From IMG/VR virus record IMGVR_UViG_3300027759_000046, positions 124,001 through 188,000 of that record: 64,000 nt of DNA; one strand, given 5' to 3'. Positions within the stretch are counted from its first letter, which is position 1, and each line of letters opens with the position of its first letter. A program made the translations under genes and the position numbers. Positions 46,945 through 61,437 of the stretch are shown here, in pieces. The notes under the pieces are model-generated. The model made no database searches and was not told the origin of the DNA. It saw only the letters and a list, made by a program, of their open reading frames with translations.

Positions 46945-47120
46945 TCTAGTCTTGTTTGTTTACGTTTATTAAAAATGTTGTGTTGATAGCTCAGGTCCCA
47001 GATAAATCGGGTTCGACACGTCCATACCCACCGCTTGACTCTCCACCAACGTTTGAGCTTGACCGGCCACGGATCGTTCTCCATTTCCTTAAGCAGTCTC
47101 TCTACTACTTTACTTCTCAT
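46941..47120 (-). CDS. Small Trp/Arg-rich protein (59 aa, not in ORF track)
   Basis: MRSKVVERLLKEMENDPWPVKLKRWWRVKRWVW...; overlaps both neighbours as in an operon. Confidence 0.6.
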   Translation of the reverse strand: MRSKVVERLLKEMENDPWPVKLKRWWRVKRWVWTCRTRFIWDLSYQHNIFNKRKQTRLE

Positions 47121-47565
47121 CTGACTTAGGTTTAGTAGTTATGTCAAAGGTTGCATAGATCTTTCGGGCCGCAATCTCGTGCCAGTCAGGAATGTTGCGT
47201 TCGTGTTTCTTCTGTTCCTCCTTGAGCCGTTGAGTAATTGCCTTTATGATCTGTTCTTTATCAGCAGACTCTGCCGATCCCGGCCAGTCCGTGTACCTAA
47301 GACCCCACTGCACATTGGTCCACAGCATCTGCCGTTCGGCCATGGCCTTGCGCATTTTCAGGTGCTTACGTAGGTAGGCAACGCCCCATGCCTTCCATTC
47401 CTCTGCCTGTTCAACCGTCATGGTCCAGTCCCGATACCACGCGTCCTTGCGATCCTTGATGTCTTCATAGGTTACGGGGTGGCCTGCAATCTCAAACATC
47501 TTGTTAAGGATATCGACGACTGACTGGTCTTGCTTCTGTTCTCGGGTTAGTCTGACAGTTTTCAT
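47110..47565 (-). CDS. Hypothetical protein
   Basis: 151-aa ORF; class II promoter upstream. Confidence 0.75.
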   Translation of the reverse strand: MKTVRLTREQKQDQSVVDILNKMFEIAGHPVTYEDIKDRKDAWYRDWTMTVEQAEEWKAWGVAYLRKHLKMRKAMAERQMLWTNVQWGLRYTDWPGSAESADKEQIIKAITQRLKEEQKKHERNIPDWHEIAARKIYATFDITTKPKSDEK

Positions 47566-47609
47566 GGTAAGTCTATTATACCAAATATTGGGGAAAAGGT
47601 TATTGCAGA

Positions 47610-48434
47610 CTAGGCAGTCTTAACGATATCAGCTAGGGTCTTGGCTCTAGCGCCGACCTGTTTCGCCCAGTCCGAGTTTAGCATCTCCGATGAGGCAGCA
47701 CTGAAATTTTGTTGTTTGATTTGGGCTAGAAAGTTCGTGAAGGCCGAGAGACCCTTTTTACCAAGATTGAAAACCATTTCGGTTATAACTCCCTGCACGG
47801 CAGGCGGTAGAGAAGGTAGAGTTGGCACAAGCTCCTGTGCATCAGCCTTGGCCTGACCAAGATCGGTCAGTAGCAGCGAGTCTATTTGGGCCTGAGTTAA
47901 TGATGAGGTTCCGGCCTTGATCTTTTCGGGATTGGCTCCAACCTTTTTTAGTTGGGCAACAGCGTCTTCACGGTTAAGATTGAAACCTACACCAACTGTT
48001 GGAATCTGCCTGGAGTCTAGATACTTAACGGGCTTGGAACCCTCATGACGGATAACTCGGTCCTTGATTGAGGCAATGATTGGGTCGGTCGTTGGCGGCG
48101 GTGCAGTAAACGAATTCAGGTACCGTTCGGCCCCAATGGTCTTGACGTGGGTCATGATCTGATTACGGAAGCCAGAGTCCAGGATTCCAAGCTCGCCGTT
48201 GACCGCGTCGCCCACACTTGGATAGGCCCATGCTCTCTGCTGATCGTCATGCCCTGCCTTTAGGGCCTGATTGACCTTGACAAAAGAGGCAGCATCCGGA
48301 ATCTGGCGGATTGCCGAGACCAGACTCTCCTCGTCCGTGCCGAGTCCTGAGACTGCGGTCTGAATCTGTGCTGCCAGCTGGTCAGCAGTCGCGGCCTCGT
48401 TTAGCCAGCTCTCAAATAGGTTAATGTGTTTCAT
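47610..48434 (-). CDS. CTS-like peptide + annexin-like repeat + T4-type (GH24) lysozyme
   Basis: MKHINLFESWLNE; AVSGLGTDEESLV...SVGDAVNGELG; RHEG...YLD...PTVGVGFN...EMVFNLG...SDWAKQVGARA. Confidence 0.85.
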   Translation of the reverse strand: MKHINLFESWLNEAATADQLAAQIQTAVSGLGTDEESLVSAIRQIPDAASFVKVNQALKAGHDDQQRAWAYPSVGDAVNGELGILDSGFRNQIMTHVKTIGAERYLNSFTAPPPTTDPIIASIKDRVIRHEGSKPVKYLDSRQIPTVGVGFNLNREDAVAQLKKVGANPEKIKAGTSSLTQAQIDSLLLTDLGQAKADAQELVPTLPSLPPAVQGVITEMVFNLGKKGLSAFTNFLAQIKQQNFSAASSEMLNSDWAKQVGARAKTLADIVKTA

Positions 48435-48453
48435 TGTTAATAGTTGTCTGTGA

Positions 48454-48918
48454 TTAGCGAGCGTATCGCTTCAAGGTCTGTGCTGCCGCAGCTGGCGTCA
48501 CGTTGCGCCAAGTAACTCGGTTTGAAATCTCCTGTGCCAAGTCGTCGATCGTCATGCTCTGATCTTGCATGAATCTGTCAACAAGCTCTGCAACCTCTTC
48601 GCTGCCACGGTTGAAGTACTCGTCTGCTAGCACCATCTCCAAATTATCTGGACGGTTGCGGTACTTTGCTGCGGTCTGAGCATTACGACCTCCGTTAACA
48701 TCAGCCTCGCGCCAGTCTCTAGTACGAGCCGAGACCCTGTCAAAACGATCGCGATCAGCGGGTTTCATGGCCTCGTAATCGTCCACTATATCTAGCAGGT
48801 CCTGGTACGAGCCATCGTCCGCGCCACTACTATGGCTGTGGGCTCTACGCAGTAGGTCATGGGCTGGGTTGCTGCCCTCGGCTAGGAATTCGGTAAAGCG
48901 TTTAACTTGTGTCTTCAT
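48454..48918 (-). CDS. Protein with CTS-like N-terminus
   Basis: MKTQVKRFTEFLAE (compare T4 IPIII MKTYQEFIAE). Confidence 0.8.
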   Translation of the reverse strand: MKTQVKRFTEFLAEGSNPAHDLLRRAHSHSSGADDGSYQDLLDIVDDYEAMKPADRDRFDRVSARTRDWREADVNGGRNAQTAAKYRNRPDNLEMVLADEYFNRGSEEVAELVDRFMQDQSMTIDDLAQEISNRVTWRNVTPAAAAQTLKRYAR

Positions 48919-48942
48919 CTGTTAATATTTGTTTTTATCTGA

Positions 48943-49473
48943 TTATTTATCTAAATCTGAGTCCAGCATATAGGCTGCATCGTGGTCTTCGCCTCTCCAC
49001 CAGACTGCACGGGCTCCGCTGCGTTGGTCAAGCCAAACCTCAAGGTCAATCGAGCCAAAGTTCTCTTGCGCAATGATCTCAGCGGACTCGGCCTGCACAA
49101 GATCTTGCTGGTCATCGAGCGCAAAGAGACCGGGTAACGAGCGCACGAGCGCCTTGAATCTGGGCATGTCGTGCCAGGTCGTTGCAGTTGTATTGAAGAC
49201 CTCGACCACCTGTTCCAGAGGTAGAACCTGCAGTACGGCGGCCTGATCCGCCAAGCCAAGCGCCTGCAGTCGAGCCGCAGCCGGGCCAAGCTCAAGGCCC
49301 AGCACCTTGCACGCCCACAGAGCGGAGTCAACCGTGTCCAGATAGTAGTTGACATCGTTGTCCAGCTGGACGGCCATCAGCTCTTCCGAAAAGTTATCCG
49401 GATTGACGACATCTCGGAGCGTTGCAATATCGTGCTCACGCGCGTAGTTCTCAAATAGTTTAAGGTGCTTCAT
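48943..49473 (-). CDS. Protein with CTS-like N-terminus and RLxxLGL tag
   Basis: MKHLKLFENY; ARLQALGLAD; late promoter at 49477-49486. Confidence 0.75.
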   Translation of the reverse strand: MKHLKLFENYAREHDIATLRDVVNPDNFSEELMAVQLDNDVNYYLDTVDSALWACKVLGLELGPAAARLQALGLADQAAVLQVLPLEQVVEVFNTTATTWHDMPRFKALVRSLPGLFALDDQQDLVQAESAEIIAQENFGSIDLEVWLDQRSGARAVWWRGEDHDAAYMLDSDLDK

Positions 49474-49573
49474 GCTTTTATTTATTCGATAGGTAGACCC
49501 GGTTCCAGGCCTTTTCGAGCCTCAAGACTCCGGTGCGCGCCCTACAACAATTAGGTAAAGATACCCAGTCTAC

Positions 49574-49666
49574 TTATACTAGAAAAAAGATAAAGATACA
49601 AGACAACACTACAGCCAGACCTATAGGCCAGACCCAACTCCATTCTATCTTACAAGTTCTTTTCAT
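49574..49666 (-). CDS. 30-aa membrane peptide (not in ORF track)
   Basis: MKRTCKIEWSWVWPIGLAVVLSCIFIFFLV after GAGTATATTAG. Confidence 0.45.
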   Translation of the reverse strand: MKRTCKIEWSWVWPIGLAVVLSCIFIFFLV

Positions 49667-49698
49667 AAGCCTAATATACTCTATACCCGGTAACCGGG

Positions 49699-49879
49699 AC
49701 TAGGGAGTACCTGGCAACCTGACCAGCCTCCAGACCCTATAGACCCAGACACGGGACTAGGGAGTAACCCCGAACCCTGAGCCAGACCCCAGACTCGCCT
49801 GACCCCGATGGGACTAGGGAGTGCCGGGCAGCCAGCCGCCCTTGGGGTACCTGCTCGGCCTGCTTAAACACTAGGGAGT
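49699..49879 (+). repeat. Array of four ACTAGGGAGT sites at exact 57-bp period
   Basis: Starts at 49699, 49756, 49813, 49870; 47-bp intervening sequences diverged. Confidence 0.95.
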
Positions 49880-50013
49880 ACGGTGACCCCCTCGGCCTCG
49901 CCGGAAACTCTGGACTCCAGGGTCTCGCGGGGCCGGGGATGCCGAGACTATAGGGACTGGACGGGACATGGGGATCCGCGGAGTCTCGGCAGACCGGGTA
50001 TAAATAAGTCTAT

Positions 50014-50682
50014 ATGGAAACACGCGATACACAAGACGGAGCCGAGGATAACAGAGATTACCTTGCGCCCGGCCACGGACCTACTGGCAATCTGGTCTAT
50101 AAGAAAGATGCAGCTCGGTACCTAGGTATAAGCCTTAAGACTCTAGAGCGCTATGTGAAACAGGGTCTGGTCAAGCCCTTTAAGAACGAGGTAAACGGCC
50201 GAACCTACTTTGACCAGCTGGATCTACTAGCCTTACTAGGGAGTAGACTACCCCAAGAACGAGAGGTTGTGCTGTACTGCCGGGCTGCGGGGATTCCGGA
50301 TCAGGGTAAAGCCGGCGTATCCAGCCAGGCCAGACTGCGAGACCAGGTAGACCGCTGTACCGAGTACTGTACCAAGGCTGGGGTCCGGGTCGATCGTATA
50401 ATCCAAGAGATTGGAAAGGGGCACACCCTGAATGGTCGCAGCGGGATTGACCAATTGCTGGATTTAGTGTTCCGAAAGAAGGTATCAATGATCGTGATCG
50501 AGTGCCCGGATCGTCTGGCTCGTTGGGGCATGGGCGAGGTCTTGGAGAGATTCCTGACCTGGCACGGTGTAGAGCTGCATGTTATAAACAAGGGCTGGTC
50601 ACGTGCCGAATTCCGCGAAGAGGTAAAAGAAGATCTTGCGGGAATCCTATTCGAGGCGAAACGCCTGCTAGGAGAAGCTTAA
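50014..50682 (+). CDS. IS607 TnpA-like serine recombinase (HTH + resolvase fold), catalytic Ser apparently lost
   Basis: AARYLGIS.KTL.RY...G HTH; YCRAA in place of YxRVS; EIGKG...GR; DRLARWG; no adjacent tnpB; promoter TATAAATA at 49999-50006. Confidence 0.85.
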   Translation: METRDTQDGAEDNRDYLAPGHGPTGNLVYKKDAARYLGISLKTLERYVKQGLVKPFKNEVNGRTYFDQLDLLALLGSRLPQEREVVLYCRAAGIPDQGKAGVSSQARLRDQVDRCTEYCTKAGVRVDRIIQEIGKGHTLNGRSGIDQLLDLVFRKKVSMIVIECPDRLARWGMGEVLERFLTWHGVELHVINKGWSRAEFREEVKEDLAGILFEAKRLLGEA

Positions 50683-51053
50683 CTAAATATTGTTGGATTA
50701 CGGCGGCCCCATTCTCTGAGCAAGACGCCAGCCTGGGAGTTTGCCTCGTTCTCTATGTCAGATCCGTCGGCACCGTCCAAGACCTTGCCGCTGTCGCGCT
50801 GATGATGGTGTACCAATTCATGGGCCAAGGTTCTGTACCAGTCTGCACGGACTCTGGTTCCGCGAAGAACCCAGATCTCATTGGACTGTGGATTAAAGTA
50901 TCCCATTGACTTATTTAACATAGCCTCCCTATGGTCATCAGAAATGTGGATCGTTGGGGTGCTGGTCCAGCCTAACTGCTGACGACAGAAGTGTACGAAC
51001 TCCTCTAATTCGGAGTCTTCCTGCCATTCACGGGATTCTTTAATGTATTTCAT
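50679..51053 (-). CDS. HExxH metallopeptidase-like protein with CTS-like start
   Basis: MKYIKE; TLAHELVHH...E.EAN..AG; late promoter at 51057-51066. Confidence 0.75.
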   Translation of the reverse strand: MKYIKESREWQEDSELEEFVHFCRQQLGWTSTPTIHISDDHREAMLNKSMGYFNPQSNEIWVLRGTRVRADWYRTLAHELVHHHQRDSGKVLDGADGSDIENEANSQAGVLLREWGRRNPTIFS

Positions 51054-51389: not shown

Positions 51390-51421
51390 AAAAAGGGACT
51401 CCACTAGGGAGTCCCTCTCTT
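51390..51421. terminator. Bidirectional terminator containing an ACTAGGGAGT copy
   Basis: AAAAAAGGGACTCC-ACTAG-GGAGTCCCT. Confidence 0.75.
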
Positions 51422-51441: not shown

Positions 51442-52560
51442 CTAGATAGCAGCTAGGTCTGCGTGTTGTAGATCCCAAGTCTTAGCGAATAGATTTCCAC
51501 CGTCGACCTTGAAACGTTTTGAGTTCTCGAAGTTGAAGATCGACTGGTGACTTCCAATCCATGTCAACTCGTTAACTACATCCCATACAGTAGCATCAGT
51601 CTTGATAAACTTCTTCTGTGCGTCTGTTAGGGTCAATGGGTTGTGGCCCTTACGGAAGATACGTTTTGTTGCCGCATCGTATTCTGGAAAGAACTGTTGT
51701 TCTGCTGCCTTGATTAGGTGAGCCTTCATGTCAGGATTTTCTTCCTTGATCTGGCCAGTTACTGAGTACATCGCTCGCTCTAATTCTCCGTAGCTTGCAC
51801 GTGTTGTCATCGCTGTTTCCAATCTGTCTTGGAAAGTTCTTGGTACAAATCCTACCTTTGCCCAACCGTTCATGCTCGTTAAGAGTTCGCGGAAAGCGTC
51901 TTGGCCTTTACCAAACTCGAATGCTGTATTCAAGTTTCTGGCTACTGCACCGTTTGCGCAGCTTAGGCGTAAGAAGAAGTCGTCTACTCTTGAGTTGATA
52001 TTGGAGTTTACTAGGGAGATCCCGAAGCGGAACACCTCGTCCTTACCGATCTTCTCAAAGCCTACTTGACTGCCGTGGATGAGGTTGATACTTAAGCCGT
52101 TCTTGCCGCCATGGTCGATTGACTCTACATGCATGTCGGGGATCTCGTTAAGGATCGTCTCCGCCGTGTTGAATAGGGTCTCATTGCTTAGACGATGGTA
52201 ACGATCTGCCTTTACGATATCGCCAACTTCGCGTTTGTCCGCATCGCCGATAAGTAAGAACTCTTTTGAACCGTCACGCGTTTCTGAATAGGCTTTAACT
52301 GCCTGTAATAGTTTGGTCGCGACAGCTCTGTCCTCGTTCTTGTCCATGCGGCTAAGCAACGTGGATTGGATATTGACTGCCTGTCCCAAGCGGTTGAAGA
52401 ACCTGTTAGAGACTGGGATACGTGCGCCATCGATAAAGATGCATCCGTTCTTGATTGAACTATCGTCGATCTGAATATCAGATAACTTAACTCGCTTTGT
52501 TAGCGGATCCTGTCCTGCGAGATTTGCTTTGCTTTCGCTAAATTGACTTTGATTAATCAT
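51442..52560 (-). CDS. DUF932/DUF945-like protein
   Basis: Y.RLSN, FGISLVNS and LRLSCANG motifs. Confidence 0.6.
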   Translation of the reverse strand: MINQSQFSESKANLAGQDPLTKRVKLSDIQIDDSSIKNGCIFIDGARIPVSNRFFNRLGQAVNIQSTLLSRMDKNEDRAVATKLLQAVKAYSETRDGSKEFLLIGDADKREVGDIVKADRYHRLSNETLFNTAETILNEIPDMHVESIDHGGKNGLSINLIHGSQVGFEKIGKDEVFRFGISLVNSNINSRVDDFFLRLSCANGAVARNLNTAFEFGKGQDAFRELLTSMNGWAKVGFVPRTFQDRLETAMTTRASYGELERAMYSVTGQIKEENPDMKAHLIKAAEQQFFPEYDAATKRIFRKGHNPLTLTDAQKKFIKTDATVWDVVNELTWIGSHQSIFNFENSKRFKVDGGNLFAKTWDLQHADLAAI

Positions 52561-52588: not shown

Positions 52589-53689
52589 TTATACTAAATT
52601 GTCTGTAGCTTCGTCCGTTTGCGGAGCAATAGTTTCCTCTTCAGTTGGGGTCTTAACTGATAAGAAGAGATCGTTGAACTTGTGTTCCAACTCCTGACGA
52701 CGAGCTGACTCCTCATCCGCAAGTTTAGCAACCTCGGTCTCCTGTCTCCATGAGGTCTCGTCCCACTTGACTTCACCGTTTACTAGGGAGTAGTATAGAC
52801 GCTTACCGACTAGGCTTCCTCCACGTCTGTTCTTTGAGAACTCTACGAAACGTCTGCCTGACTCGTCGAACTTGATCTCCATCATGGATGTGGTCGCATG
52901 TTTAAGATAGGTAGATCCTACATACTGTCCGCCTTTCGTCATGTGCTGAATTGCAAAGATTGTTTTGCCGTGTTTGTCAGCAGCTTCGATGATGAGGTTG
53001 GTCAGCCATGTCTGGGCTCTCGTAGATTTCCAGCCTAGGATATCCGCAAGCTTTACAATAATATCCTGATGAGAGTCAATCAAGATTACGTCGTGATCCC
53101 CTTTGATTGTGTCTTCCAACACCTTGTCGAAACGACCCATCACGTAGTCCATAACCAATAAGGTCGGAACGTTCGCAATGATTGGGGTTTTTTGGAAGTA
53201 GAAGTAGAGATCGTTACGAGTCATCTCACTTGAGATGTAGAGGATCTTGGCCTCGGGCTGTACTCGCTTGATCTTAGAGATAAGATCCAATGTCACGGTT
53301 GATTTACCTACGCCCGACTCGCCGATTACAATATTAGCAGTTCCCGAAAAGATACCACCGTCTTCCGTATGGTCCGAGAAAAGCTTGTCAATAATACCGC
53401 CCGTCTTGTAGGCTTTAAACTCTGGGAAATCCATCTCACCGATCTCGATAATCTCGGCCACCATGTCTTGGGGTACCTCGATGGTAGGGGTTACTAGGGA
53501 GTCCGTCGTGATACCGGCTCTGAGCTTCTTTATTACTCCATTGAAGAGACCGTAACTCACATTGGCATCTGCACCTGTGGTCATGAACTCTGTGTAGAGC
53601 TGCTGTACTGTCTTGTCCGTTGGGACCTCGCCGTTATGGCTTTGTTCGAAGAAGGTTCGAACCGTAAGTTCTTTTTTTCCGATCTGCAT
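52589..53689 (-). CDS. RecA/RadA(Sms)-like ATPase
   Basis: GGIFSG...GESGVGKST, YISSEM, ILIDS, H.TK.G...G...LKH, KNRRG; lacks Zn finger and Lon-like domain. Confidence 0.8.
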   Translation of the reverse strand: MQIGKKELTVRTFFEQSHNGEVPTDKTVQQLYTEFMTTGADANVSYGLFNGVIKKLRAGITTDSLVTPTIEVPQDMVAEIIEIGEMDFPEFKAYKTGGIIDKLFSDHTEDGGIFSGTANIVIGESGVGKSTVTLDLISKIKRVQPEAKILYISSEMTRNDLYFYFQKTPIIANVPTLLVMDYVMGRFDKVLEDTIKGDHDVILIDSHQDIIVKLADILGWKSTRAQTWLTNLIIEAADKHGKTIFAIQHMTKGGQYVGSTYLKHATTSMMEIKFDESGRRFVEFSKNRRGGSLVGKRLYYSLVNGEVKWDETSWRQETEVAKLADEESARRQELEHKFNDLFLSVKTPTEEETIAPQTDEATDNLV

Positions 53690-53805
53690 ATTTTATTTGG
53701 GGTTAATTGGTTTATAATATTATACTACAGTTCTGCAGTTTTGGCTTCAGTTCTTCAGTTTTTTATTATTTATTTAGACTGAAGAACCGGCCGGACTAGG
53801 GAGTA

Positions 53806-53979
53806 CTACTCATCAAAGTACAGGAACTCAACCGCTTCCGCGCATTCAAACATTCCAAGGTCTTCGAACATGGTGTAGGCTCCGTCAGCATCGCTCATCG
53901 CGACCACCTCCATTGCCTGGTACACGGCGTCCTCGCCGAACTGGGCTATTGCTGCATCTATTTTTTCTTGTGTTACCAT
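53806..53979 (-). CDS. Small acidic protein (57 aa, not in ORF track)
   Basis: MVTQEKIDAAIAQFGEDAVYQAMEVVAMSDADGAYTMFEDLG...FDE. Confidence 0.7.
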   Translation of the reverse strand: MVTQEKIDAAIAQFGEDAVYQAMEVVAMSDADGAYTMFEDLGMFECAEAVEFLYFDE

Positions 53980-54538: not shown

Positions 54539-54575
54539 ACGTTAAAGGTTTAATGGTTTAAGAATTAATTGATAT

Positions 54576-54660
54576 GTAAATATAATACATTAGTTTGACA
54601 CTAAAAAACTTTTTATGACTTATTTTCAAAAAAGTTATTAACATTGGATTGTTAATAACT
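54576..54660 (-). promoter_or_regulatory. Early promoter cassette with phased GTTATTAACA box (inverted pair here)
   Basis: TGTTAATAAC-TTTTTTGAAAATAAGTCATAAAAAGTTTT...TATATTTAC. Confidence 0.8.
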
Positions 54661-54736
54661 CGCAGAGTCTGAGGCAGGTCGGAGTATACCTCCCGCTTCC
54701 TTGTTCCGAACCGTCCCGTCTAGATTGATTGACATA

Positions 54737-54804
54737 GTAAATATAATAAAAAACCCTGAATCTAAAAAATCCAGGGTCATTTATTTTCAGGAAAGTTATT
54801 AACA
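54737..54804 (-). promoter_or_regulatory. Early promoter cassette
   Basis: Box 58 bp from the TATATTTAC element; drives a ~75-nt non-coding stretch. Confidence 0.75.
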
Positions 54805-54808
54805 ATTT

Positions 54809-55033
54809 CTAGTGTTCAGGAATCTCTAATTCTAGGTCTCCGATCTTTACTGTCTTGCCGATGAGGTCTCGACTGCTTGCCGCTTTGGCATGGCCGCGGT
54901 GGTCATGGTAATCAAGGTCTATTTCTTCAGTCGCGTTCGCAAGTAGGTTAAACATCTGTTCCGGTTCTTTTACACAAACCTCCCTGCCGTTTTCATAAAG
55001 GTATAGTCGTACTATCTCGTTCATGGTGGTCAT
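54809..55033 (-). CDS. Early hypothetical protein
   Basis: 74-aa ORF. Confidence 0.7.
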   Translation of the reverse strand: MTTMNEIVRLYLYENGREVCVKEPEQMFNLLANATEEIDLDYHDHRGHAKAASSRDLIGKTVKIGDLELEIPEH

Positions 55034-55065
55034 GGGTTTTTTGTTATTTAATAAAAAGAAAGGGG

Positions 55066-55446
55066 TTATAAACCCCTTTGCAATATTTCCTTTTCTCTTT
55101 GAGTTAGGGACTCAACTCCCGATCTCGAAATTTTATCAAGGATTTCGTCCACCGTTAAATCCGGTGTTGCAGTTTGCGCTGCCGTTTTGAGTACCGCATT
55201 GATCGCTTGCATCAACGCCTCAGGAAGATTTAGGTTCACCTTAGTTTCTTCCATTAAGAAGAATGTGGCTCCTGTTTCCTTCACATCCTGGGTGATCTCT
55301 TCCTCTGATGATTGAGTATTAAAGACCGACAGGATTGCGCCCGGAATTGGTGCGGCGAATGCGGGTCCTACAATGTGGGGTTTCAACGCTTGTGAAACCG
55401 CTGGGTTCGGAGCTGAGCCGAATCGAACTAAGAATAATTTTTTCAT
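55066..55446 (-). CDS. Protein with C-terminal DUF6576-like domain
   Basis: VDEILDKISRSGVESLTQREKEIL. Confidence 0.7.
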   Translation of the reverse strand: MKKLFLVRFGSAPNPAVSQALKPHIVGPAFAAPIPGAILSVFNTQSSEEEITQDVKETGATFFLMEETKVNLNLPEALMQAINAVLKTAAQTATPDLTVDEILDKISRSGVESLTQREKEILQRGL

Positions 55447-55469
55447 ATTTGGTTAGATTGATTTATAAA

Positions 55470-55537
55470 GCTAATATACAACAAAACTTTTAAATAAAAA
55501 AACTTTTGATGAATTATTTTCAGAAAAGTTATTAACA
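55470..55537 (-). promoter_or_regulatory. Early promoter cassette
   Basis: TGTATATTAGC element with box at 58 bp. Confidence 0.8.
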
Positions 55538-55589
55538 AAAAAGGGAGCCACATGGACTCCCGATCTTGTCAATAAACCAATTTTACCAA

Positions 55590-55886
55590 TTATACCAAAT
55601 GTAGTATCTCAGCTAGAGCGCGATCAGTTACTCGTCGGCTCATACCTCCAATATGCCATTCAATAGTTTCTTCTTTCGAGATGCGACGGTATTCTTTCCA
55701 GTCGTAGATGGTAAATACATCTCCTTCTTCCGTTTCGCAAATCCATTCGAAATTTACTTTATCTTCTCCAGTATTATCTTCAATCGTGGGTTCTCCAAGG
55801 ATTGCGATAAGGTCATTCACTGAACACTTTAATACTGTATCGTGGAACGAGGTTCCGCCTGCACGCTTTTCGGTTTTTCTAGCCAT
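55590..55886 (-). CDS. Early hypothetical protein
   Basis: DKVNFEW...FTIYDWK...WHIGG; promoter TGTATATTAGC at 55913-55923. Confidence 0.75.
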   Translation of the reverse strand: MARKTEKRAGGTSFHDTVLKCSVNDLIAILGEPTIEDNTGEDKVNFEWICETEEGDVFTIYDWKEYRRISKEETIEWHIGGMSRRVTDRALAEILHLV

Positions 55887-55950
55887 GGTTATTTTTTTAG
55901 TTGGTTGATAAAGCTAATATACAACAAAAACCTGATACTGGAAAATCTTT

Positions 55951-56274
55951 TTAAATATTTTTTACAGGTATTTTCTCGATCAAGGCTAGGCTGCCAAGCG
56001 GAGACCACATAGCCTCTTCATAGCTTTCAAACCGGGACCGGTCCCATAGCCAGACCAGACCGTGCTTCTTCCATTCCTCTCGCGCTGCACGCTCTGTCCT
56101 GCTTGCTTCGGCGATCTGCATCTGAAACAAGGCAATTGCATACACGGCTTTAAATGTTCCGCAGACACAGACAGGTTTTTCTTCTTCCCCTACACGAGAG
56201 GTTAGCAACCAGACTTCTTTATTTTTCCGGGTTGGACTAGGCATGTTAATCTCTTTTTTCTGGTACGAATACAC
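55951..56274 (-). CDS. Hypothetical protein
   Basis: 107-aa ORF. Confidence 0.6.
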   Translation of the reverse strand: MYSYQKKEINMPSPTRKNKEVWLLTSRVGEEEKPVCVCGTFKAVYAIALFQMQIAEASRTERAAREEWKKHGLVWLWDRSRFESYEEAMWSPLGSLALIEKIPVKNI

Positions 56275-56353
56275 AGTAGATACAGAATGCTACACTTACT
56301 AGGATTGCTATTGCGCACATGGTTGAATGGATTAAGGGGTTAATAATATTATC

Positions 56354-56602
56354 TTACCCAAGTTCTTCACTTAACTTCTTGAGGTCAGCACATTTCTCGT
56401 ACTGCTCTTTCTTTTCAAAATGCAAGATCATGGTCCAGATAGCCTGTTTCTTTTCTTCCATTGGGGTTCCATCGTGCACGACATCTCTGAATTCGCCGGC
56501 CAGTGCTTCATAGAGTCTGTCCATGAATCCATCGTAATCTGATTCGCGCAGCCGGATAAGTTCCAGCAGGATATCGTTGTATGTTCTGGTTTTCTTTGCC
56601 AT
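56354..56602 (-). CDS. Hypothetical protein with UVR-like C-terminus
   Basis: FEKKEQYEKCADLKKL. Confidence 0.65.
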   Translation of the reverse strand: MAKKTRTYNDILLELIRLRESDYDGFMDRLYEALAGEFRDVVHDGTPMEEKKQAIWTMILHFEKKEQYEKCADLKKLSEELG

Positions 56603-56721
56603 ATCTTTATTATTTATTCTTGTTTATTTAGAGTCACTCAGCGTGAATCTTAGCTTGTCTATAATATAGTACTAAAAAAGGGTCTTCGGAACACCGAGAC
56701 CCTTAATAATAATTTGGATTA

Positions 56722-57048
56722 CTAGATAAATTGGGTTAGGTAGCCGGTCGGCCAGCCCTCATCGTCCTGTTCAAAGTCCATGTCTGTCTGAATCAGGTCC
56801 GAGTAAATGCTTAGCTTCTCGCGTGGTTCCAGCCCGGCAAAGCAGTTAGAGATTAGGGTATCTACTGATTCGTCTGGTACAAACTCATCGTCCAACCTGA
56901 CTGAACCATCTTCTAACATGAAGATGTCTACTGCTAAGTTCTCTCGCATTATGTCTATTGCATCTGCTGCATTTAACTCTGCAAGGTAAGCGTCTACTTG
57001 TTCGAACGCTTCTTCAATTGGAACTCTTAATAGGTCTGGATTTCTCAT
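56722..57048 (-). CDS. Acidic hypothetical protein
   Basis: 108-aa ORF. Confidence 0.7.
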   Translation of the reverse strand: MRNPDLLRVPIEEAFEQVDAYLAELNAADAIDIMRENLAVDIFMLEDGSVRLDDEFVPDESVDTLISNCFAGLEPREKLSIYSDLIQTDMDFEQDDEGWPTGYLTQFI

Positions 57049-57061
57049 TGTTAAATCTTGG

Positions 57062-57187
57062 TTAGGGTTGATAAAAGAATAGAATACACGTTGCTACTAC
57101 TGCGAGAGCAATGATAATCAATGCTCCATTAATTAGAGAATCTCTTCTCATCATTTTAACTTCTTTTTCTGAAAATTTCTTTGCCAT
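57062..57187 (-). CDS. Small membrane protein (41 aa, not in ORF track)
   Basis: MAKKFSEKEVKMMRRDSLINGALIIIALAVVATCILFFYQP. Confidence 0.6.
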   Translation of the reverse strand: MAKKFSEKEVKMMRRDSLINGALIIIALAVVATCILFFYQP

Positions 57188-57223
57188 CTTTTTTATATTT
57201 TAATTGATTAATAATTTAGGTAA

Positions 57224-57679
57224 TTAGGCGGCGTTCTTTACGAACGCCTTGTCTGCCCATGTCTTAGCTCCAGCCATCCTATAATTATTCTGACTGTATA
57301 GATTAGTATTAGACCAGTCTTGATTGATGTCGCCCACTTCCATTGCCAGGAACATGTCCGAATCCATTAACTTGATCTTGTTACCTGACCTTGCGAATAC
57401 AGTGATGAAGGTTTCTGATCCTTCTGCTCTGAACTCGATTGTCTGCAACGCGCCTTTTTTAAATCCTCTGAATACATCCATTGCAGAGTTCCAAGACTGT
57501 CTTCCCCAATTTGCTCTAATGCCATGGTCTTCAACGACTGTCATGAAGCCTGCCTGTACTCGAACGATTGCGCGGTATTCGCCTTTACGGCCTTGGATAA
57601 AATCCACTTGGCTGATTCTCTCCGCATTGAAGATTTCAACTGATGGTTTGTAGTCTGGATTAAATTGTTTCTTTTTCAT
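57224..57679 (-). CDS. Early hypothetical protein
   Basis: 151-aa ORF; partial promoter cassette at 57704-57755. Confidence 0.75.
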   Translation of the reverse strand: MKKKQFNPDYKPSVEIFNAERISQVDFIQGRKGEYRAIVRVQAGFMTVVEDHGIRANWGRQSWNSAMDVFRGFKKGALQTIEFRAEGSETFITVFARSGNKIKLMDSDMFLAMEVGDINQDWSNTNLYSQNNYRMAGAKTWADKAFVKNAA

Positions 57680-57754
57680 GGTTGATTGATTTGGTTTATA
57701 ATAGTAAATATAATACTTATTCTTGACAGTAAAAAACTTTTTATGAATTATTTT

Positions 57755-58063
57755 TTAAAATCTTTCTGAACCTAAATGAGAGCAGGCAGAAGAGTATCTC
57801 TCGAGAAGGTTGCTGCCGGCTAGCAGAAGAAAGCTTGAACCTGCAATTCCACGGATCTTATAATCTTCAGGTACTATAACACTGCCAAGTCTGCTGCCGC
57901 CTGAATCCAGTGTCATAATGAATCTACCTTCTCGAACCACTATGAATTCGGAAGAGAAGCCTTCCATCGTAGAGCCCGACGCAATTTGAGTCCAGCCAAT
58001 TTCTTGACCAGACTCGTTTAAGATTTGGAGGCTTGAACCTCGTTGTATAACATTACCTATCAT
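57755..58063 (-). CDS. Hypothetical beta-rich protein
   Basis: 102-aa ORF with a two-fold internal repeat-like pattern. Confidence 0.65.
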   Translation of the reverse strand: MIGNVIQRGSSLQILNESGQEIGWTQIASGSTMEGFSSEFIVVREGRFIMTLDSGGSRLGSVIVPEDYKIRGIAGSSFLLLAGSNLLERYSSACSHLGSERF

Positions 58064-58278
58064 GCTGTTGTCTTTGAATTTTTAATACACTCTTGAAATT
58101 CTTCTTCCGTCAGGTCAGGTATATCCTGAGTTACAAGCTTTAGCAGGGTTGCTGCTTCTATCTCTGTTACTAGGGAGTCCTTATTGACTTTGCCCTTAAA
58201 AGGATCTCCTTCAGAGAATAGAATCTCGACTGCGGTCTCTGCCCAGAAGCGGGCTTCTAATTGAGTTGTCATTATCAT
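58060..58278 (-). CDS. Hypothetical protein
   Basis: 72-aa ORF. Confidence 0.65.
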   Translation of the reverse strand: MIMTTQLEARFWAETAVEILFSEGDPFKGKVNKDSLVTEIEAATLLKLVTQDIPDLTEEEFQECIKNSKTTA

Positions 58279-58994
58279 ACGCCTACCTCCTTTCTCATTT
58301 TAGCACGAGCAACCTTAAGGGCACGGTTAACTTCGACTGGGGTTTTACCTACTGCATCCGCAACTTCCTTGGTAGAGAGACCGTCTCCAACGAGACCGTA
58401 GAACAACTCGACGATTTGACGTTCAGTTGGTTTAAGAACGTTAAGTACTCTACGGAGTATTCGGGTTTGGTCCTCACTATCGAATGGGTCTTGGAAATCT
58501 TCTCTTAACAAGAGATCGCCTACTGTATCGTCGCCATCCTCGCCGATTGGACGATCCAATTGGATGTTACGCATGTTAATGCTTTCGCCTGCCATCTTAC
58601 GTTTGTAAAGATCGTATTCCTGATTTACTGGAATTCGGACAGTACGACCGACTTCGCAAAGAGCAAGGTTTAATCTCTTACGAATCCAGAACTGAGCGTA
58701 AGTAATAAACTTTACGTCTTTATCTGGGGTAAAACGACGAGCAGCTTCGATAAGACCCGCATTACCTTCTTGGATTAAGTCATCGATGGAAAGACCCATA
58801 CCGATAAACTTGTTTGCAAGAGTAACAACGAACTTAAGATTCGCTTGTACTAATTGATGCATTGCTCGCTCATCTCCTTTCTGGATGCGGACTGCTAATT
58901 GAAGTTCTTCAGCCTTGCTGAGCGGAACTGCTACGGGCGCGATATCTTTGAAATATTGCGGTAGACTTTCTGATGTTTCGAATCTTTTCGACAT
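58275..58994 (-). CDS. RNA polymerase sigma-70 family factor (regions 1.2-4)
   Basis: PLSKAEE..LA..I..GD..A...LV.ANL.FV, DLIQEGN.GL..AA..F, KFITYA.FWIR, C-terminal HTH. Confidence 0.95.
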   Translation of the reverse strand: MSKRFETSESLPQYFKDIAPVAVPLSKAEELQLAVRIQKGDERAMHQLVQANLKFVVTLANKFIGMGLSIDDLIQEGNAGLIEAARRFTPDKDVKFITYAQFWIRKRLNLALCEVGRTVRIPVNQEYDLYKRKMAGESINMRNIQLDRPIGEDGDDTVGDLLLREDFQDPFDSEDQTRILRRVLNVLKPTERQIVELFYGLVGDGLSTKEVADAVGKTPVEVNRALKVARAKMRKEVGV

Positions 58995-59024
58995 AGTTGG
59001 TTTGGTTTAATTGATTATTATAAT

Positions 59025-59092
59025 GTAAATATAAACAAAATTTCTGACAAGTAAAAACTTTTTATGACTTATTTTCAAAAAAGTTATTAACA
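59025..59092 (-). promoter_or_regulatory. Early promoter cassette driving the sigma factor
   Basis: TATATTTAC element with GTTATTAACA box at 58 bp. Confidence 0.8.
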
Positions 59093-59096
59093 ATTG

Positions 59097-59207
59097 TTAG
59101 TTAACAACTTGACCGCAATCGCAGCATTTTACAAGTTTGATTCCTGAAACGTGGCGAACTGCTACGTAAGTTCTGATGTGTTGGCATTTGGCTGATTGGT
59201 TATTCAT
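59097..59207 (-). CDS. 36-aa Cys/His peptide (not in ORF track)
   Basis: MNNQSAKCQHIRTYVAVRHVSGIKLVKCCDCGQVVN; own partial promoter cassette at 59211-59265. Confidence 0.6.
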   Translation of the reverse strand: MNNQSAKCQHIRTYVAVRHVSGIKLVKCCDCGQVVN

Positions 59208-59329
59208 AATGTAAATATAACTATAATACTTGACAGTAAAAAACTTTTTGTGAATTATTTTCAAATTATTTTATACGCGAAAAGGGGTCCAACCACGGAC
59301 CCCAATTCTATCAATCAACCAATAGTATT

Positions 59330-59611
59330 TTAATTTAAGCAGATTCCTGTTTCTCGTAACAGGTTCTCTAATTGTATATCTTCTTCAGACATGCCTGATT
59401 CTCTCTTAACCTGTTTAATACAGAACTGCATAAGCAATCGTTGAAGCTCTTGCGTACTGCGCTCGTCCTGTGTTGCGGCCAATAGGGTTATTAATCCATT
59501 ACCGATTAAGATAAGTTCTGAATCAGATGTCTTGATTCCGCCCGCGATTAGGCTATTCGCCAAGGTCTCTAGCTCGGCTCTTGTTTTTTCTCTAATTTCT
59601 TTCTTATTCAT
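59330..59611 (-). CDS. Hypothetical protein
   Basis: 93-aa ORF. Confidence 0.7.
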   Translation of the reverse strand: MNKKEIREKTRAELETLANSLIAGGIKTSDSELILIGNGLITLLAATQDERSTQELQRLLMQFCIKQVKRESGMSEEDIQLENLLRETGICLN

Positions 59612-59639
59612 GGTAGTTGATTATTGATTTAATCTTATA

Positions 59640-59834
59640 TTACTCTTTTCCAAGCGCGATGGCCTTGTTCACTTCATAGATTCTTGACCAGAATTCGTTG
59701 TATTCAAGTTGATTGTCTGGCTTTACAGTTGACTGTACTCTCGCACCGCCGCCATAGGTTAAGTCAATGGGTTCTCCGATCGTTGGATCAATTCCCTGTA
59801 ATTTATAGATTAAGGCCTTAAGTATTTTCTTCAT
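59640..59834 (-). CDS. Hypothetical protein
   Basis: 64-aa ORF. Confidence 0.65.
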   Translation of the reverse strand: MKKILKALIYKLQGIDPTIGEPIDLTYGGGARVQSTVKPDNQLEYNEFWSRIYEVNKAIALGKE

Positions 59835-59949
59835 AGTTATTAGGTTTTACAGATTAAGTTTGTTTTTTAAGGGTCACGCGATTCCCCCAGTACTACTGCG
59901 TGGTCCAGGACCCATGCCTGGGAGGCACGGAAATCCAGGACTAGGTCTA

Positions 59950-60144
59950 TTAACAGATTCGATTGGCCACAAAGCCTTGTGCATCGCTTGCGCCATAGTA
60001 TTTCTTGATCGCGGCCGGTGCGGTAGGATTATCCATCAGCCAGCCATCCGCAATATCGAACGCCATTGAATCGTCTATGTCTCCGGCATCGATTGCGCCC
60101 AGTGCAAGCTCTCGTAATTCAGTATCTAATTTTTCTTTTGTCAT
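59950..60144 (-). CDS. Hypothetical protein
   Basis: 64-aa ORF. Confidence 0.65.
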   Translation of the reverse strand: MTKEKLDTELRELALGAIDAGDIDDSMAFDIADGWLMDNPTAPAAIKKYYGASDAQGFVANRIC

Positions 60145-60203
60145 AGGTATTAGTTTTAGGGTTTAGGGTTAGATTTATAATCAACTGTTACTAGGGAGTC
60201 CGG

Positions 60204-60671
60204 CTAGGCCAGACCCTTGTCTCGTAAAAACAGGCAGCGCTGAATCCTGGTATACAGGTCCGGCAAGGAGTCTGTCATCGCTAAGATCTTCTTTAGGTCA
60301 GGCTTGGGTAGGGTTGACGCAACCATCGCAACCGCAACATCGATTGGATTACCGAGCTTCAGCTGCTCCATGATCTGGCTCGAGCCGGTTGGGCTGATTG
60401 AGCCGGGAATCTTGCACTGTGCTCCGAACTCAAATTGATAGAAGGATTGACGTTCCGTCTGATCAACTAAACTTGCATCAAGCATCTGTCTCACGCGCTG
60501 GATATGCTTGCTTGTCGTGCGGCTGTACTTGCCCTTTGTCATGAGAACTGGTCTACGGCTCAGCTCCTTTGGATAGAACTGTAGGGTCGCGACATGGGTT
60601 TCGTAGCTTATTACCTTGTTCCCAACGAGGAATAGGTTCTGTGCAATCTGTAGAGATGGTTGGAATTTCAT
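60204..60671 (-). CDS. Early hypothetical protein
   Basis: VISY.THVA...KYSRTTSKH motif; shortened promoter cassette at 60675-60721. Confidence 0.7.
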   Translation of the reverse strand: MKFQPSLQIAQNLFLVGNKVISYETHVATLQFYPKELSRRPVLMTKGKYSRTTSKHIQRVRQMLDASLVDQTERQSFYQFEFGAQCKIPGSISPTGSSQIMEQLKLGNPIDVAVAMVASTLPKPDLKKILAMTDSLPDLYTRIQRCLFLRDKGLA

Positions 60672-60755
60672 AGGTTAAATATAAGCATTTTAATTGAGAT
60701 AAAACAATAAAGTTATTAACATAGCTACTAGGGAGTCCGACATAGCCGGTGAGTC

Positions 60756-61274
60756 CTATGACTCTACCGGCGAGAATACTTCGGCAAGGTTGAAGTTGCC
60801 AGCCTGACTGCTGTGAAGCATACGCTCTAAGCATACGGGACCGAGCGCTGTGTGAATCGATTCCGGATGGGTAAGCGGTAATCCGCAAGCGCAGCATCTG
60901 CCTTCGTGGAATAGACCTACACGACCGCGTAAGATCTCTGGATTCTTGATCGCTGATACGACCCAGCCTAGGGCGCGAGCTAAGCGGGAATCCGGTCTAA
61001 CGTTGCGGCCGAGCTTTACGTGCATGGTATCAGAGAATAGAGTTCCTGCGAACTGCGAGCTTTGACGGCCGTCGTTAAGCAAGGAGATGTCAATGTAATA
61101 GATCGGCAACTTGATCTTGCGATCCTGCTTATCGCGCAGCTGCTTGATCTTAACTGTCATGTGGGTTCCTTCCGCAAGGTTACGGAACGTAAGCACTGCA
61201 CGGCCTGCTAACGCGAGCTTTGGAAGAGCAAGCGGGTTGAGGTTTGGACGGGGGATGTTTCTGTGGTTTCTCAT
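60756..61274 (-). CDS. Protein with C-terminal DUF6011-like Zn-binding motif
   Basis: HEGRCCACG.PLT.PESI...LGPVC. Confidence 0.75.
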   Translation of the reverse strand: MRNHRNIPRPNLNPLALPKLALAGRAVLTFRNLAEGTHMTVKIKQLRDKQDRKIKLPIYYIDISLLNDGRQSSQFAGTLFSDTMHVKLGRNVRPDSRLARALGWVVSAIKNPEILRGRVGLFHEGRCCACGLPLTHPESIHTALGPVCLERMLHSSQAGNFNLAEVFSPVES

Positions 61275-61297
61275 GGTTGATTGGTTTAATTGATTAA

Positions 61298-61376: not shown

Positions 61377-61437
61377 CTGGCGGACTGACGTGCAGGTCGG
61401 AGTCTACCCTCTGCGATCCGGTTAAAGATCGAACCTT

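What the first reader, a model, noticed from the sequence alone, without database searches (positions are those of the whole stretch)
49686..49926. Four ACTAGGGAGT sites at exact 57-bp period with divergent spacers
Seen: cores start at 49699, 49756, 49813 and 49870; the first three are preceded by GGG; units 1 and 2 share CCAGAC-rich traces while units 3 and 4 do not; a CCCGG-TAA-CCGGG hairpin abuts the first core. Length is conserved while sequence is not. Inference: a phased protein-binding platform (57 bp is about 5.4 turns), such as an origin iteron set, a packaging/terminus signal, a synapsis site, or an injection-stop-like element at the boundary between the early region and the rest of the genome.
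Basis: partly seen in the sequence, partly recalled or inferred. Interest (0 to 1): 0.8.

Follow-up and report, generated by a model that had tools for sequence, protein, structure and literature searches.

The report
Phased docking sites, dead recombinase
The four evenly spaced copies of a 10-base word are the densest part of a one-strand network of that word, which a family of uncultured giant phages keeps letter-perfect next to a transposase-like DNA-binding protein that has lost its catalytic serine; the array is most likely that protein's docking platform, an arrangement not described before.

Summary
ACTAGGGAGT (M) starts at 49699, 49756, 49813 and 49870, with 47-bp spacers that are unrelated in sequence. 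M is the commonest 10-mer in the window.

The window is part of an uncultured ~250-kb phage. Across 20 non-redundant related loci, M or its variant ACTACGGAGT lies on one strand 151 times and on the other twice. Partner copies are enriched only at 56-58 bp. No site lies more than 500 bp upstream of gene 50014-50682, density peaks at that gene's 5' end, and sites then thin out over about 13 kb.

The gene encodes an IS607-TnpA-like protein with a MerR-type HTH and a resolvase fold, but no conserved nucleophile serine. Relatives with only 29% identity carry the same architecture using the variant word. Inside a RadA-like ATPase gene, M is held in place by frozen synonymous codons.

Best reading (confidence ~0.5): M is the binding site of this domesticated pseudo-recombinase, and the array is its nucleation platform. 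What binding achieves is unknown; silencing, looping or insulation of the early/middle gene block are the candidates. Rivals are a polar transcription signal, cassette recombination sites and an origin. This looks like a new variant of a known kind.

The parts
49686..49698 (.). Perfect palindrome CCCGG-TAA-CCGGG abutting core 1
   Evidence: A similar palindrome is present only in L026 among the relatives, so it is not a general feature.
49699..49708 (+). M core 1 (ACTAGGGAGT), preceded by GGG
49756..49765 (+). M core 2, preceded by GGG
49813..49822 (+). M core 3, preceded by GGG
49870..49879 (+). M core 4 (preceded by AAC)
   Evidence: The last two units are the best conserved across relatives.
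49729..49742 (.). Left arm of inverted repeat TCCAGACCCTATAG; the partner arm is 49948-49961 (93% complementary). The pair brackets units 2-4.
   Evidence: I4. Function unknown.
50000..50007 (+). ATAAATAA box 6 nt before the ATG of the recombinase-like gene; probable middle/late promoter
   Evidence: conserved before this gene in all relatives, with 17 copies on the - strand and 2 on the + strand in the window, each before a start codon.
50014..50682 (+). REC: IS607-TnpA-like protein with an N-terminal MerR/Xis-type HTH and a resolvase fold, lacking a conserved nucleophile Ser. Proposed binder of M.
50235..50244 (+). M inside REC (codes LLGS). In one sublineage a second copy lies 57 bp downstream, inside the variable loop.
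50679..51053 (-). Small metalloprotease-like gene, convergent with REC and always next to it
51394..51416 (.). Hairpin containing M (51403-51412), followed on the - strand by a T run; terminator of the DUF932 gene
51442..52560 (-). DUF932-like protein gene, with a 1-mismatch M at 52010-52019
52589..53689 (-). RadA/RecA-like ATPase gene holding two M (52782-52791 and 53493-53502) in frame xAC TCC CTA GTx
53795..53804 (+). Intergenic M, 2 nt after the stop of the - strand gene 53806-53979
58169..58178 (+). M inside the small - strand gene 58060-58278, same reading frame as the other intragenic copies
58275..58994 (-). Phage sigma-70-family factor. It holds a CTACGGAGT at 58450-58458 where relatives have an exact M.
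60190..60199 (+). Intergenic M, 5 nt after the stop of 60204-60671
60727..60736 (+). Outermost M, 20 nt after the stop of the DUF6011 protein gene 60756-61274. This is the far edge of the domain in all relatives.

Best explanation
M (ACTAGGGAGT; minor variant ACTACGGAGT) is the DNA recognition word of the adjacent IS607-TnpA-like protein REC (50014-50682). REC keeps the MerR/Xis-type winged-helix DNA-binding domain and the resolvase-fold oligomerisation core, but has lost a conserved catalytic serine, so it behaves as a domesticated pseudo-recombinase. The four cores at a 57-bp period would be its high-density nucleation platform, by analogy with the way IS1535 TnpA dimers assemble cooperatively on directly repeated subterminal motifs and then capture a second DNA. 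The like-oriented single and paired M spread over the next ~11 kb would be secondary sites bridged to, or coated from, that platform. REC carries the ATAAATAA (probable middle/late) box. The inferred outcome is autoregulation plus silencing, looping or insulation of the early/middle gene block at its border with the late genes. What is shown: the motif network, its polarity, the 57-bp spacing, nucleotide-level selection, the sharp co-location with REC, and the degenerate active site. What is inferred: that REC is the binder, and what binding does.
For: (1) Co-location. In 20 non-redundant REC or REC-like loci there are 151 sites on the REC strand and 2 on the other. No site lies more than 500 bp upstream of the REC start in up to 8.5 kb. 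Density is 4.7 per kb in -500..0 and 2.2 per kb in 0..500, and lower for about 13 kb downstream.
(2) Independent test from protein to motif. Four contigs fetched only because they encode distant REC-like proteins (27-33% identity) all carry 1-4 exact ACTACGGAGT on the gene strand, within or next to the gene.
(3) Independent test from motif to protein. A scan for variant pairs recovered L084 and L090, with three copies at 57-bp spacing just before REC. It also recovered L086, an outgroup clade with REC 29%, ATPase 51% and sigma 48% identical, which has the same one-strand network.
(4) Every lineage keeps a pair or array at REC: upstream, inside the coding sequence, or just downstream as in L071.
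(5) Spacing. Partners are enriched only at 56-58 bp and its multiples, over 97 instances, while spacer sequence is free.
(6) Nucleotide-level selection. ATPase site 2 is TAC TCC CTA GTN in 15 of 15 orthologues (56-100% aa identity) while neighbouring codons vary synonymously.
(7) REC fold and domains: Pfam HTH_17/MerR plus Resolvase; PDB and Foldseek best hits are IS607-family TnpA catalytic domains, with RacA, BldC and Xis for the HTH. The DNA-binding-domain residues are invariant, matching an invariant word.
(8) IS607 TnpAs are known to bind short directly repeated motifs cooperatively and to synapse DNA as chemically inactive dimers (PMC6188088).
(9) The units have no RNA or ssDNA structure and no Rfam family matches, which favours duplex-DNA recognition.
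Against: There is no binding data. REC always travels with the metalloprotease, DUF932 and RadA-like genes, so the association with REC alone rests on the density peak rather than on independent assortment. A 57-bp spacing (5.4 turns) is unlike the 10-11 bp phasing of IS1535 motifs. Lineage-specific 12-13-bp phased short repeats lie beside some arrays and could be the true TnpA-type sites. A plain operator model does not need strict one-strand polarity over 10 kb. It also does not explain why intergenic copies sit 0-30 nt after stop codons. Metatranscriptome contigs give no timing or strand information.
Confidence: 0.5

Rival explanations
1. M is a compact polar transcription signal read on the + strand: a promoter/start site or a non-template-strand loading signal. 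It would drive rightward transcription from the array through REC and antisense into the early/middle genes, so each gene would carry its own antisense start just past its stop codon.
For: The 151:2 strand polarity, the razor-sharp start of the domain with highest density at its head, and intergenic copies 0-30 nt downstream of - strand stop codons pointing back into the gene. Long genes carry internal copies. The word resembles the -4..+6 part of T7-class promoters (own knowledge).
Against: Nothing is conserved upstream of the 10-mer. No phage RNA polymerase was found in the window. REC has its own ATAAATAA box. In one sublineage the pair lies inside REC, so it cannot be REC's promoter. RNA run X3 shows no cover over the array and little over REC (contigs only, unstranded).
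Confidence: 0.15
2. M is a site-specific recombination site marking gene-cassette boundaries in an integron-like or REP/RAYT-like manner. The array would be the capture platform, and recombination between direct copies would excise or insert cassettes.
For: All copies are direct. Single genes flanked by two M are the ones absent or relocated in relatives: f58 in L014/L017 versus one M in the window, f26 in W/L052, f21 in L061. L053 has an 'empty' M-46 nt-M at the same junction. IS607 exchanges at GG, and M contains GGG.
Against: REC lacks a conserved nucleophile. The canonical R+2 position is Ala in 75 of 84 sequences. The alternative Ser103 is Ser in only 48 of 84 (Gly in 16). 14 of 84 have no Ser anywhere in the loop, and outgroups read YxRVN/K/A. 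The S72G change abolishes IS607 transposition. M is conserved inside essential-looking genes. No joints at M appear in DNA contigs. In a hyperplastic region, genes followed by a 3' M will look flanked without M-mediated exchange.
Confidence: 0.1
3. M acts in the - strand (sense) transcript or during - strand transcription as a terminator, pause, processing or stability signal placed after each gene, with the tandem array as a strong stop at the end of the block.
For: Sense orientation throughout, and a position just after stop codons and next to hairpin terminators. Arrays lie at the distal end of the - strand block, including L071, where two gene blocks converge.
Against: Only one of 12 copies lies in a canonical terminator. 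The units have no structure (z about 0). RNA contig depth does not fall across the two intragenic M (11 then 17.7). Copies are conserved inside coding sequences. The density peak at REC, which is antisense to such transcripts, goes unexplained.
Confidence: 0.07
4. The array is a replication origin, with iterons beside an AT-richer stretch, and the dispersed M are loading sites for the neighbouring RadA/DnaB-like ATPase.
For: Phased repeats lie beside a 43% GC spacer. Repeats sit inside or next to the putative binder's own gene, as in lambda O or SPP1 G38P (own knowledge). A helicase-like ATPase always lies nearby.
Against: A 57-bp period and an 11-kb dispersal are atypical for iterons. The array itself is 64% GC. 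GC skew is dominated by coding strand and shows no turn here. No initiator-type domain was found.
Confidence: 0.07
5. M is a packaging or terminus signal, an injection stop, or a T5-type strand-specific nick site.
For: One-strand restriction, as with T5, phiKMV and LUZ24 nicks (own knowledge).
Against: The sites are confined to ~11 kb of a ~250-kb genome rather than genome-wide. No terminase lies nearby. Only assembled contigs were available, so read ends could not be examined.
Confidence: 0.05

Closest known systems
IS607-family TnpA and its subterminal repeats (IS1535 left end; PMC6188088)
   Same: The protein architecture matches: N-terminal MerR-like HTH plus a resolvase-fold domain. A short asymmetric word of 9-10 bp is directly repeated next to the gene. 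Cooperative multi-dimer assembly and capture of a second DNA by chemically inactive dimers provide a ready mechanism.
   Different: There is no conserved nucleophile Ser, no tnpB, and a single syntenic copy kept over deep divergence. The period is 57 bp rather than 10-11 bp. Copies on both sides of the gene are direct, not inverted, and the word is spread over ~11 kb, including inside other genes.
REP elements and RAYT (REPtron): domesticated IS200/IS605 Y1 transposase flanked by its cognate extragenic repeats
   Same: A transposase-derived gene sits amid the densest cluster of a short repeat that otherwise lies just after stop codons between genes.
   Different: RAYTs keep their catalytic residues and act on ssDNA hairpins. 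REPs are palindromic, occur in both orientations and are genome-wide. M is unstructured, one-stranded and confined to one domain.
RacA-ram, KorB-OB and N15 SopB dispersed sites
   Same: A wHTH protein (RacA is a structural hit for the REC HTH; NCBIfam hit) binds a cluster plus dispersed copies of one word over a defined genome region, to organise or silence it.
   Different: Those sites are palindromes without polarity, and the proteins have no recombinase fold.
BldC and Xis: MerR/Xis-type domains binding direct repeats head to tail
   Same: An asymmetric site with a uniform orientation within arrays and a variable number of repeats per locus. Both are structural hits for the HTH.
   Different: Their repeats abut at about 10 bp, not 57 bp.
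PeSL mobile regulatory cassettes of T4-type phages (Arbiol et al. 2010; own knowledge, paper not read here)
   Same: Repeated intergenic elements lie in a hyperplastic early region where genes shuffle.
   Different: The true PeSL-like elements of this phage are separate ~100-bp repeats. M is only 10 bp, and junctions that carry M lack them.

Membership tests
IS607-family insertion sequence | TnpA with an N-terminal MerR-like DNA-binding domain and a C-terminal serine-recombinase fold | tested here: met
   Pfam HTH_17/MerR plus Resolvase. NCBIfam IS607 transposase E = 2e-29, but 102 bits is below the 110-bit cut-off. PDB and Foldseek best hits are 3lhk, 6dgc, 3lhf, 3ilx and 6dgb.
IS607-family insertion sequence | Conserved active-site serine (and the YxRVS motif) | tested here: not met
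   The motif reads YCRAA. Position R+2 is Ala in 75 of 84. Ser103 is Ser in 48 of 84. 14 of 84 have no Ser in the loop, and outgroups read RVN/RVK/RVA.
IS607-family insertion sequence | Mobile: several copies or variable positions, usually with tnpB; ends related by an inverted repeat, with GG termini | tested here: not met
   There is one copy in conserved synteny across 20 non-redundant loci and no tnpB-like ORF nearby. Repeats on both sides of the gene are direct (L014, L077).
IS607-family insertion sequence | Short directly repeated motifs beside tnpA, bound by TnpA | tested here: inconclusive
   Repeats are present and peak at the gene, but binding was not testable with these tools.
CRISPR array | Near-identical repeats of about 23 nt or more, spacer turnover between strains, cas genes or a leader | tested here: not met
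   Only 10-13 nt repeat. Spacers are orthologous and diverge by point changes between relatives. Close relatives have identical arrays. No cas domain appears among the neighbours scanned.
Iteron-type replication origin | Clustered iterons (about 17-22 bp, period about 22 bp) next to an initiator gene and an AT-rich unwinding element | tested here: inconclusive
   The period is 57 bp, the core 10 bp, and copies are dispersed over 11 kb. A 43% GC spacer lies beside the array. No initiator domain was found.
Integron | Tyrosine integrase IntI, attI, and structured attC at cassette 3' ends | tested here: not met
   The neighbour has a serine-recombinase fold without a nucleophile. M has no secondary structure. 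Only the 3'-of-gene position is shared.
Intrinsic terminator | GC-rich hairpin followed by a U run | tested here: not met
   Only the copy at 51403 lies in such a hairpin.
T5/phiKMV-type strand-specific nick sites | Nicks at the word in virion DNA | not testable with these tools
   Only assembled contigs of public runs could be laid.

The most novel reading that the evidence does not exclude
A transposase-derived, catalytically dead DNA-bridging protein uses a phased array plus a strictly polar set of 10-bp sites to fold, mark or switch off a whole ~10-kb early/middle gene domain of a giant phage. This could work as a domain-wide timing switch, or as a directional loading track that also defines where gene cassettes can be swapped. 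Such a transposon-end synapse, re-used as a chromatin-like regulator, has no described counterpart in phages.
Probability: 0.25. Interest if true: 0.85.

Novelty: new variant of a known kind. Interest (0 to 1): 0.68.

Why it matters
The network is a clean, testable case of transposase domestication in viruses. One small protein, one exact 10-bp word, a fixed 57-bp geometry and a sharply bounded, polar domain are all conserved from about 100% down to 29% protein identity in uncultured ~250-kb freshwater phages (host probably Bacteroidota). If REC binds M, the system gives a handle on how giant phages partition and time their early genes. It would also offer a minimal natural model of IS607-type filament and synapse assembly uncoupled from catalysis. 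The frozen synonymous codons inside the ATPase gene show that an overlapping DNA code constrains protein-coding sequence here. The finding also cautions that 'integrase/resolvase' annotations in phage metagenomes can hide non-catalytic DNA organisers.

Tried and rejected
- **CRISPR-like mini-array.** Rejected: the repeat is too short and the spacers are orthologous between relatives.
- **Structured RNA or ssDNA unit.** Rejected: folding z-scores of -1.8 to +0.8 on both strands, and no Rfam hit even at E = 1.
- **T7-type promoter.** Nothing is conserved upstream of the core.
- **MotA-box-like -30 element.** An ATAAATAA box follows M at 7-10 nt in several junctions, but at 18 nt in the window's 53795 copy, and it is absent at intragenic copies.
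- **In-frame peptide or readthrough.** Intragenic copies all use frame xAC TCC CTA GTx, but post-stop copies use all three frames in relatives.
- **ACCCTAT x3 at a 12-bp period as a general second site.** It is present only in three lineages.
- **Known phage relatives.** No megablast hit. Protein hits to cultured phages are only genuine IS607 TnpAs at 28-35% identity.
- **Literature search for the word.** It returns only Widom-601 nucleosome papers.
- **Read laying.** Only Logan contigs were available. It showed that the DUF932 and ATPase genes are transcribed, but gave nothing on ends, nicks, strands or joints at M.
- **Genome-contig scan.** Mostly unrelated hits with scattered spacing. One 254-kb phage contig was binned with a Bacteroidetes MAG.
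- **L002, L012, L019 and 9 of the 12 variant-pair loci.** These are unrelated tandem repeats or chance matches.
- **Phage-encoded RNA polymerase in the window.** Not found.

Full report
**1. The observation**

ACTAGGGAGT (called M below) starts at 49699, 49756, 49813 and 49870, an exact 57-bp period. The first three cores are preceded by GGG. The palindrome CCCGGTAACCGGG abuts core 1, and CCAGACC occurs only in units 1 and 2.

The four 47-bp spacers are 28-40% identical in register, against 28-31% for shuffled spacers. They are therefore unrelated in sequence while identical in length. Tandem Repeats Finder does not report the array.

The window holds 12 exact M, all on the + strand and all between 49699 and 60736. 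About 0.02 per strand are expected, and M is the commonest 10-mer in the window. The extra copies lie as follows:
- inside the + strand gene 50014-50682 (at 50235);
- in the terminator hairpin after the gene 51442-52560 (at 51403);
- twice inside the gene 52589-53689 (at 52782 and 53493);
- inside 58060-58278 (at 58169);
- in three intergenic spacers (at 53795, 60190 and 60727), 2-20 nt after the stop codon of the upstream - strand gene.

**2. Context**

The window is part of an uncultured giant phage. It encodes T4-type topoisomerase II subunits, two RNA ligases, 19 tRNAs and virion proteins. The closest public phages share about 55% amino-acid identity in topoisomerase, and there is no nucleotide match among deposited phages. 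Near-identical contigs reach 253 kb. One 254-kb relative was binned with a Bacteroidetes MAG. Genes here lack Shine-Dalgarno sequences, which fits that host.

Almost all genes are on the - strand. To the right of the array lie early genes with an ~100-bp repeated promoter/stem-loop element, in 11 copies between 54.5 and 62.4 kb, and a sigma-70-family factor. To the left lie a lysozyme and structural genes preceded by an ATAAATAA box, which occurs 17 times on the - strand and twice on the + strand.

**3. The neighbouring gene**

The product of 50014-50682 (REC) has an HTH_17/MerR domain followed by a Resolvase domain. [quoted passage not shown] RacA, BldC and Xis match the HTH.

REC is not an ordinary transposase:
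- It is a single, syntenic gene in every relative. The order is array, REC (+), then a convergent small metalloprotease, a DUF932-like protein, a RadA/RecA-like ATPase and, further on, the sigma factor.
- Among 84 family members, Y88, R90, R107, Q111, D166, R167 and R170 are invariant, but no serine is conserved in the beta1-alphaA loop.
- The canonical R+2 position is Ala in 75 of 84. The serine that HMMER aligns with the nucleophile is Ser in only 48 of 84 (Gly in 16, Ala in 12). 14 of 84 have no serine anywhere in the loop.
- The nearest outgroups read YxRVN, RVK or RVA.
- In IS607 itself, Ser72Gly abolishes transposition, and catalytic residues are otherwise well conserved in the family (PMC6188088).

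The family is therefore best read as a domesticated DNA-binding protein that has kept the fold.

**4. The motif network in relatives**

A scan of viral contigs for two M separated by 40-70 nt gave 26 loci. 23 of them belong to this phage family, and their spacings fall at 56-58 bp (44 of 47 intervals) although 50-80 was allowed. Arrays hold 2 to 5 units. They are homologous and diverge by point changes, with cores and unit length kept. Over 97 non-redundant instances, a partner (at least 8 of 10 matches) is enriched only at +/-56-58 bp and at 114 and 171 bp. Nothing is enriched at 10-11 or 21 bp.

In 20 non-redundant REC or REC-like loci, M or its variant ACTACGGAGT lies 151 times on the REC strand and twice on the other. 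No site lies more than 500 bp upstream of the REC start (up to 8.5 kb examined). Density is 4.7 per kb in the 500 bp before REC and 2.2 per kb in its first 500 bp, then 0.1-1.5 per kb for about 13 kb downstream. The far edge is always just after the DUF6011 protein gene. More distant phages that share only the sigma factor (57% identity) have neither REC nor M within 10 kb.

Two reciprocal tests support the link between REC and the motif:
- **Protein to motif.** Four short contigs fetched solely through distant REC-like proteins (27-33% identity) each carry 1-4 exact ACTACGGAGT on the gene strand, inside or beside the gene. In L077 the copies form about 50-bp tandem units on both sides.
- **Motif to protein.** A scan for variant pairs recovered L084 and L090, with three variant cores at exactly 57 bp before REC. 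It also recovered L086, an outgroup phage with REC 29%, ATPase 51% and sigma 48% identical, which has the same one-strand network over at least 10.5 kb.

**5. Level of selection**

At the second ATPase site, all 15 orthologues (56-100% identical) read TAC TCC CTA GTN, while adjacent Leu, Arg, Tyr, Gly, Glu and Val codons vary synonymously. At the first site the surrounding peptide is poorly conserved, yet M is exact in 10 orthologues. It has decayed or been deleted in 4 others and is the variant word in 1. In one REC sublineage, a second M lies exactly 57 bp after the conserved internal one, inside the variable loop of REC itself.

The word is therefore selected as nucleic acid. The units have no predicted structure on either strand and match no Rfam family, which points to duplex DNA.

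**6. Best explanation**

M is most likely the recognition word of REC, and the array is the nucleation platform of a multi-subunit REC-DNA complex. IS1535 TnpA dimers bind four directly repeated 9-bp motifs cooperatively, spread along the DNA, and capture a second DNA segment while chemically inactive. A protein that has kept this behaviour but lost catalysis would be a DNA-bridging organiser. MerR/Xis-type domains that read asymmetric direct repeats head to tail (BldC, Xis), or that bind a cluster plus dispersed sites over a genome region (RacA-ram), are structural neighbours of the REC HTH.

REC carries the ATAAATAA box. A plausible outcome is therefore autoregulation plus silencing, looping or insulation of the early/middle block once later genes turn on. 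That last step is inference only.

**7. What this does not explain, and the rivals**

Three features are not required by a plain operator model: strict polarity over 10 kb, the 57-bp ruler, and the placement of intergenic copies 0-30 nt after stop codons (median about 15 nt, against about 55-80 nt to the next start).

- **Polar + strand transcription signal.** An antisense start placed just past each gene would explain the polarity, the sharp head of the domain and the post-stop positions. However, nothing upstream of the core is conserved, no phage polymerase was found, and RNA contigs do not cover the array.
- **Cassette recombination.** Single genes flanked by two M are the ones absent or moved in relatives, and one relative has an 'empty' M-46 nt-M at the same junction. 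Against it stand the missing nucleophile and the copies kept inside core genes.
- **- strand terminator or processing signal.** This is weakened because RNA depth does not fall across intragenic copies, and only one copy sits in a canonical terminator.
- **Origin, packaging, injection-stop or nick readings.** None has positive support, and nicks could not be tested.

**8. Comparison and novelty**

The system works like IS607 TnpA on its subterminal repeats, and it resembles the REP/RAYT arrangement in logic. It is not a member of either. The defining serine, mobility, tnpB and inverted ends are not met, and M is neither palindromic nor genome-wide. I found no paper describing the word or a domesticated IS607-type protein with such a network, and no cultured relative.

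I rate it a new variant of a known kind: a transposase-derived DNA-binding protein with its cognate repeats. It has unusual features, namely exact 10-mer conservation down to 29% protein identity, the 57-bp ruler, one-sided polarity and codon freezing.

**9. Verdict**

The function is not established. Confidence that REC binds M is about 0.5. Interest is 0.68.

Noticed in passing
window 54552-62371: An ~100-bp intergenic element in at least 11 copies on the - strand sense, combining a stem-loop or T-run part with a TTATATTTA-type box before small early genes. It looks like the PeSL-type repeated early regulatory cassette of T4-like phages. Junctions carry either this element or M, not both.
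   Followed up: partly
window, e.g. 50000, 51065, 49485, 48950, 45819, 42565, 39415, 36720: ATAAATAA box, 17 copies on the - strand and 2 on the + strand, 4-30 nt before start codons. It is a probable middle/late promoter, perhaps read by the phage sigma factor.
   Followed up: partly
window 58275-58994 (-): Sigma-70-family factor with regions 2 and 4, always followed by a 72-aa gene that overlaps its stop. Relatives L059, L060 and L061 carry a second, longer sigma paralogue upstream.
   Followed up: no
window 11333-13732, 16192-16279, 1798-1876: Nineteen tRNA genes, all on the - strand, most in one cluster that coincides with a local GC rise.
   Followed up: no
window 47000-51000: GC island (0.51-0.55, against about 0.40 elsewhere) covering the lysozyme gene, two unknown genes, the array (0.64), REC and the metalloprotease.
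   Followed up: no
L007 17-47; L026 12870-12900; L033 4839-4857; L075 147-218: Lineage-specific short direct repeats at a 12-13-bp period just outside the arrays: ACCCTAT x3, and ACCTAACCAGGC x4-5 between two variant cores. These are phased in the manner of IS1535 TnpA motifs and might be a second class of binding site.
   Followed up: partly
window 49729-49742 and 49948-49961: A 14-bp inverted repeat (13 of 14 complementary) brackets array units 2-4. The right arm reads ACTATAGGGACT, an M-like word with a TA insertion.
   Followed up: no
L066 (464,605-bp viral contig): Fifteen copies of a word of at least 17 nt (TGGAAACCTTGTGGGCC) within 15.6 kb near a sigma-factor homologue. This may be a phage-borne CRISPR array.
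   Followed up: no
window 10245-10423: Coding tandem repeats (27- and 51-nt periods) inside the 445-aa ORF 9763-11100.
   Followed up: no
window 51427 (runs X3 and X15): RNA contigs of two metatranscriptomes both end at 51427, about 12 nt before the M-containing terminator hairpin. This could be a real 3' end region or an assembly break at a strain indel (X22 has a 2-nt deletion at 51438).
   Followed up: no
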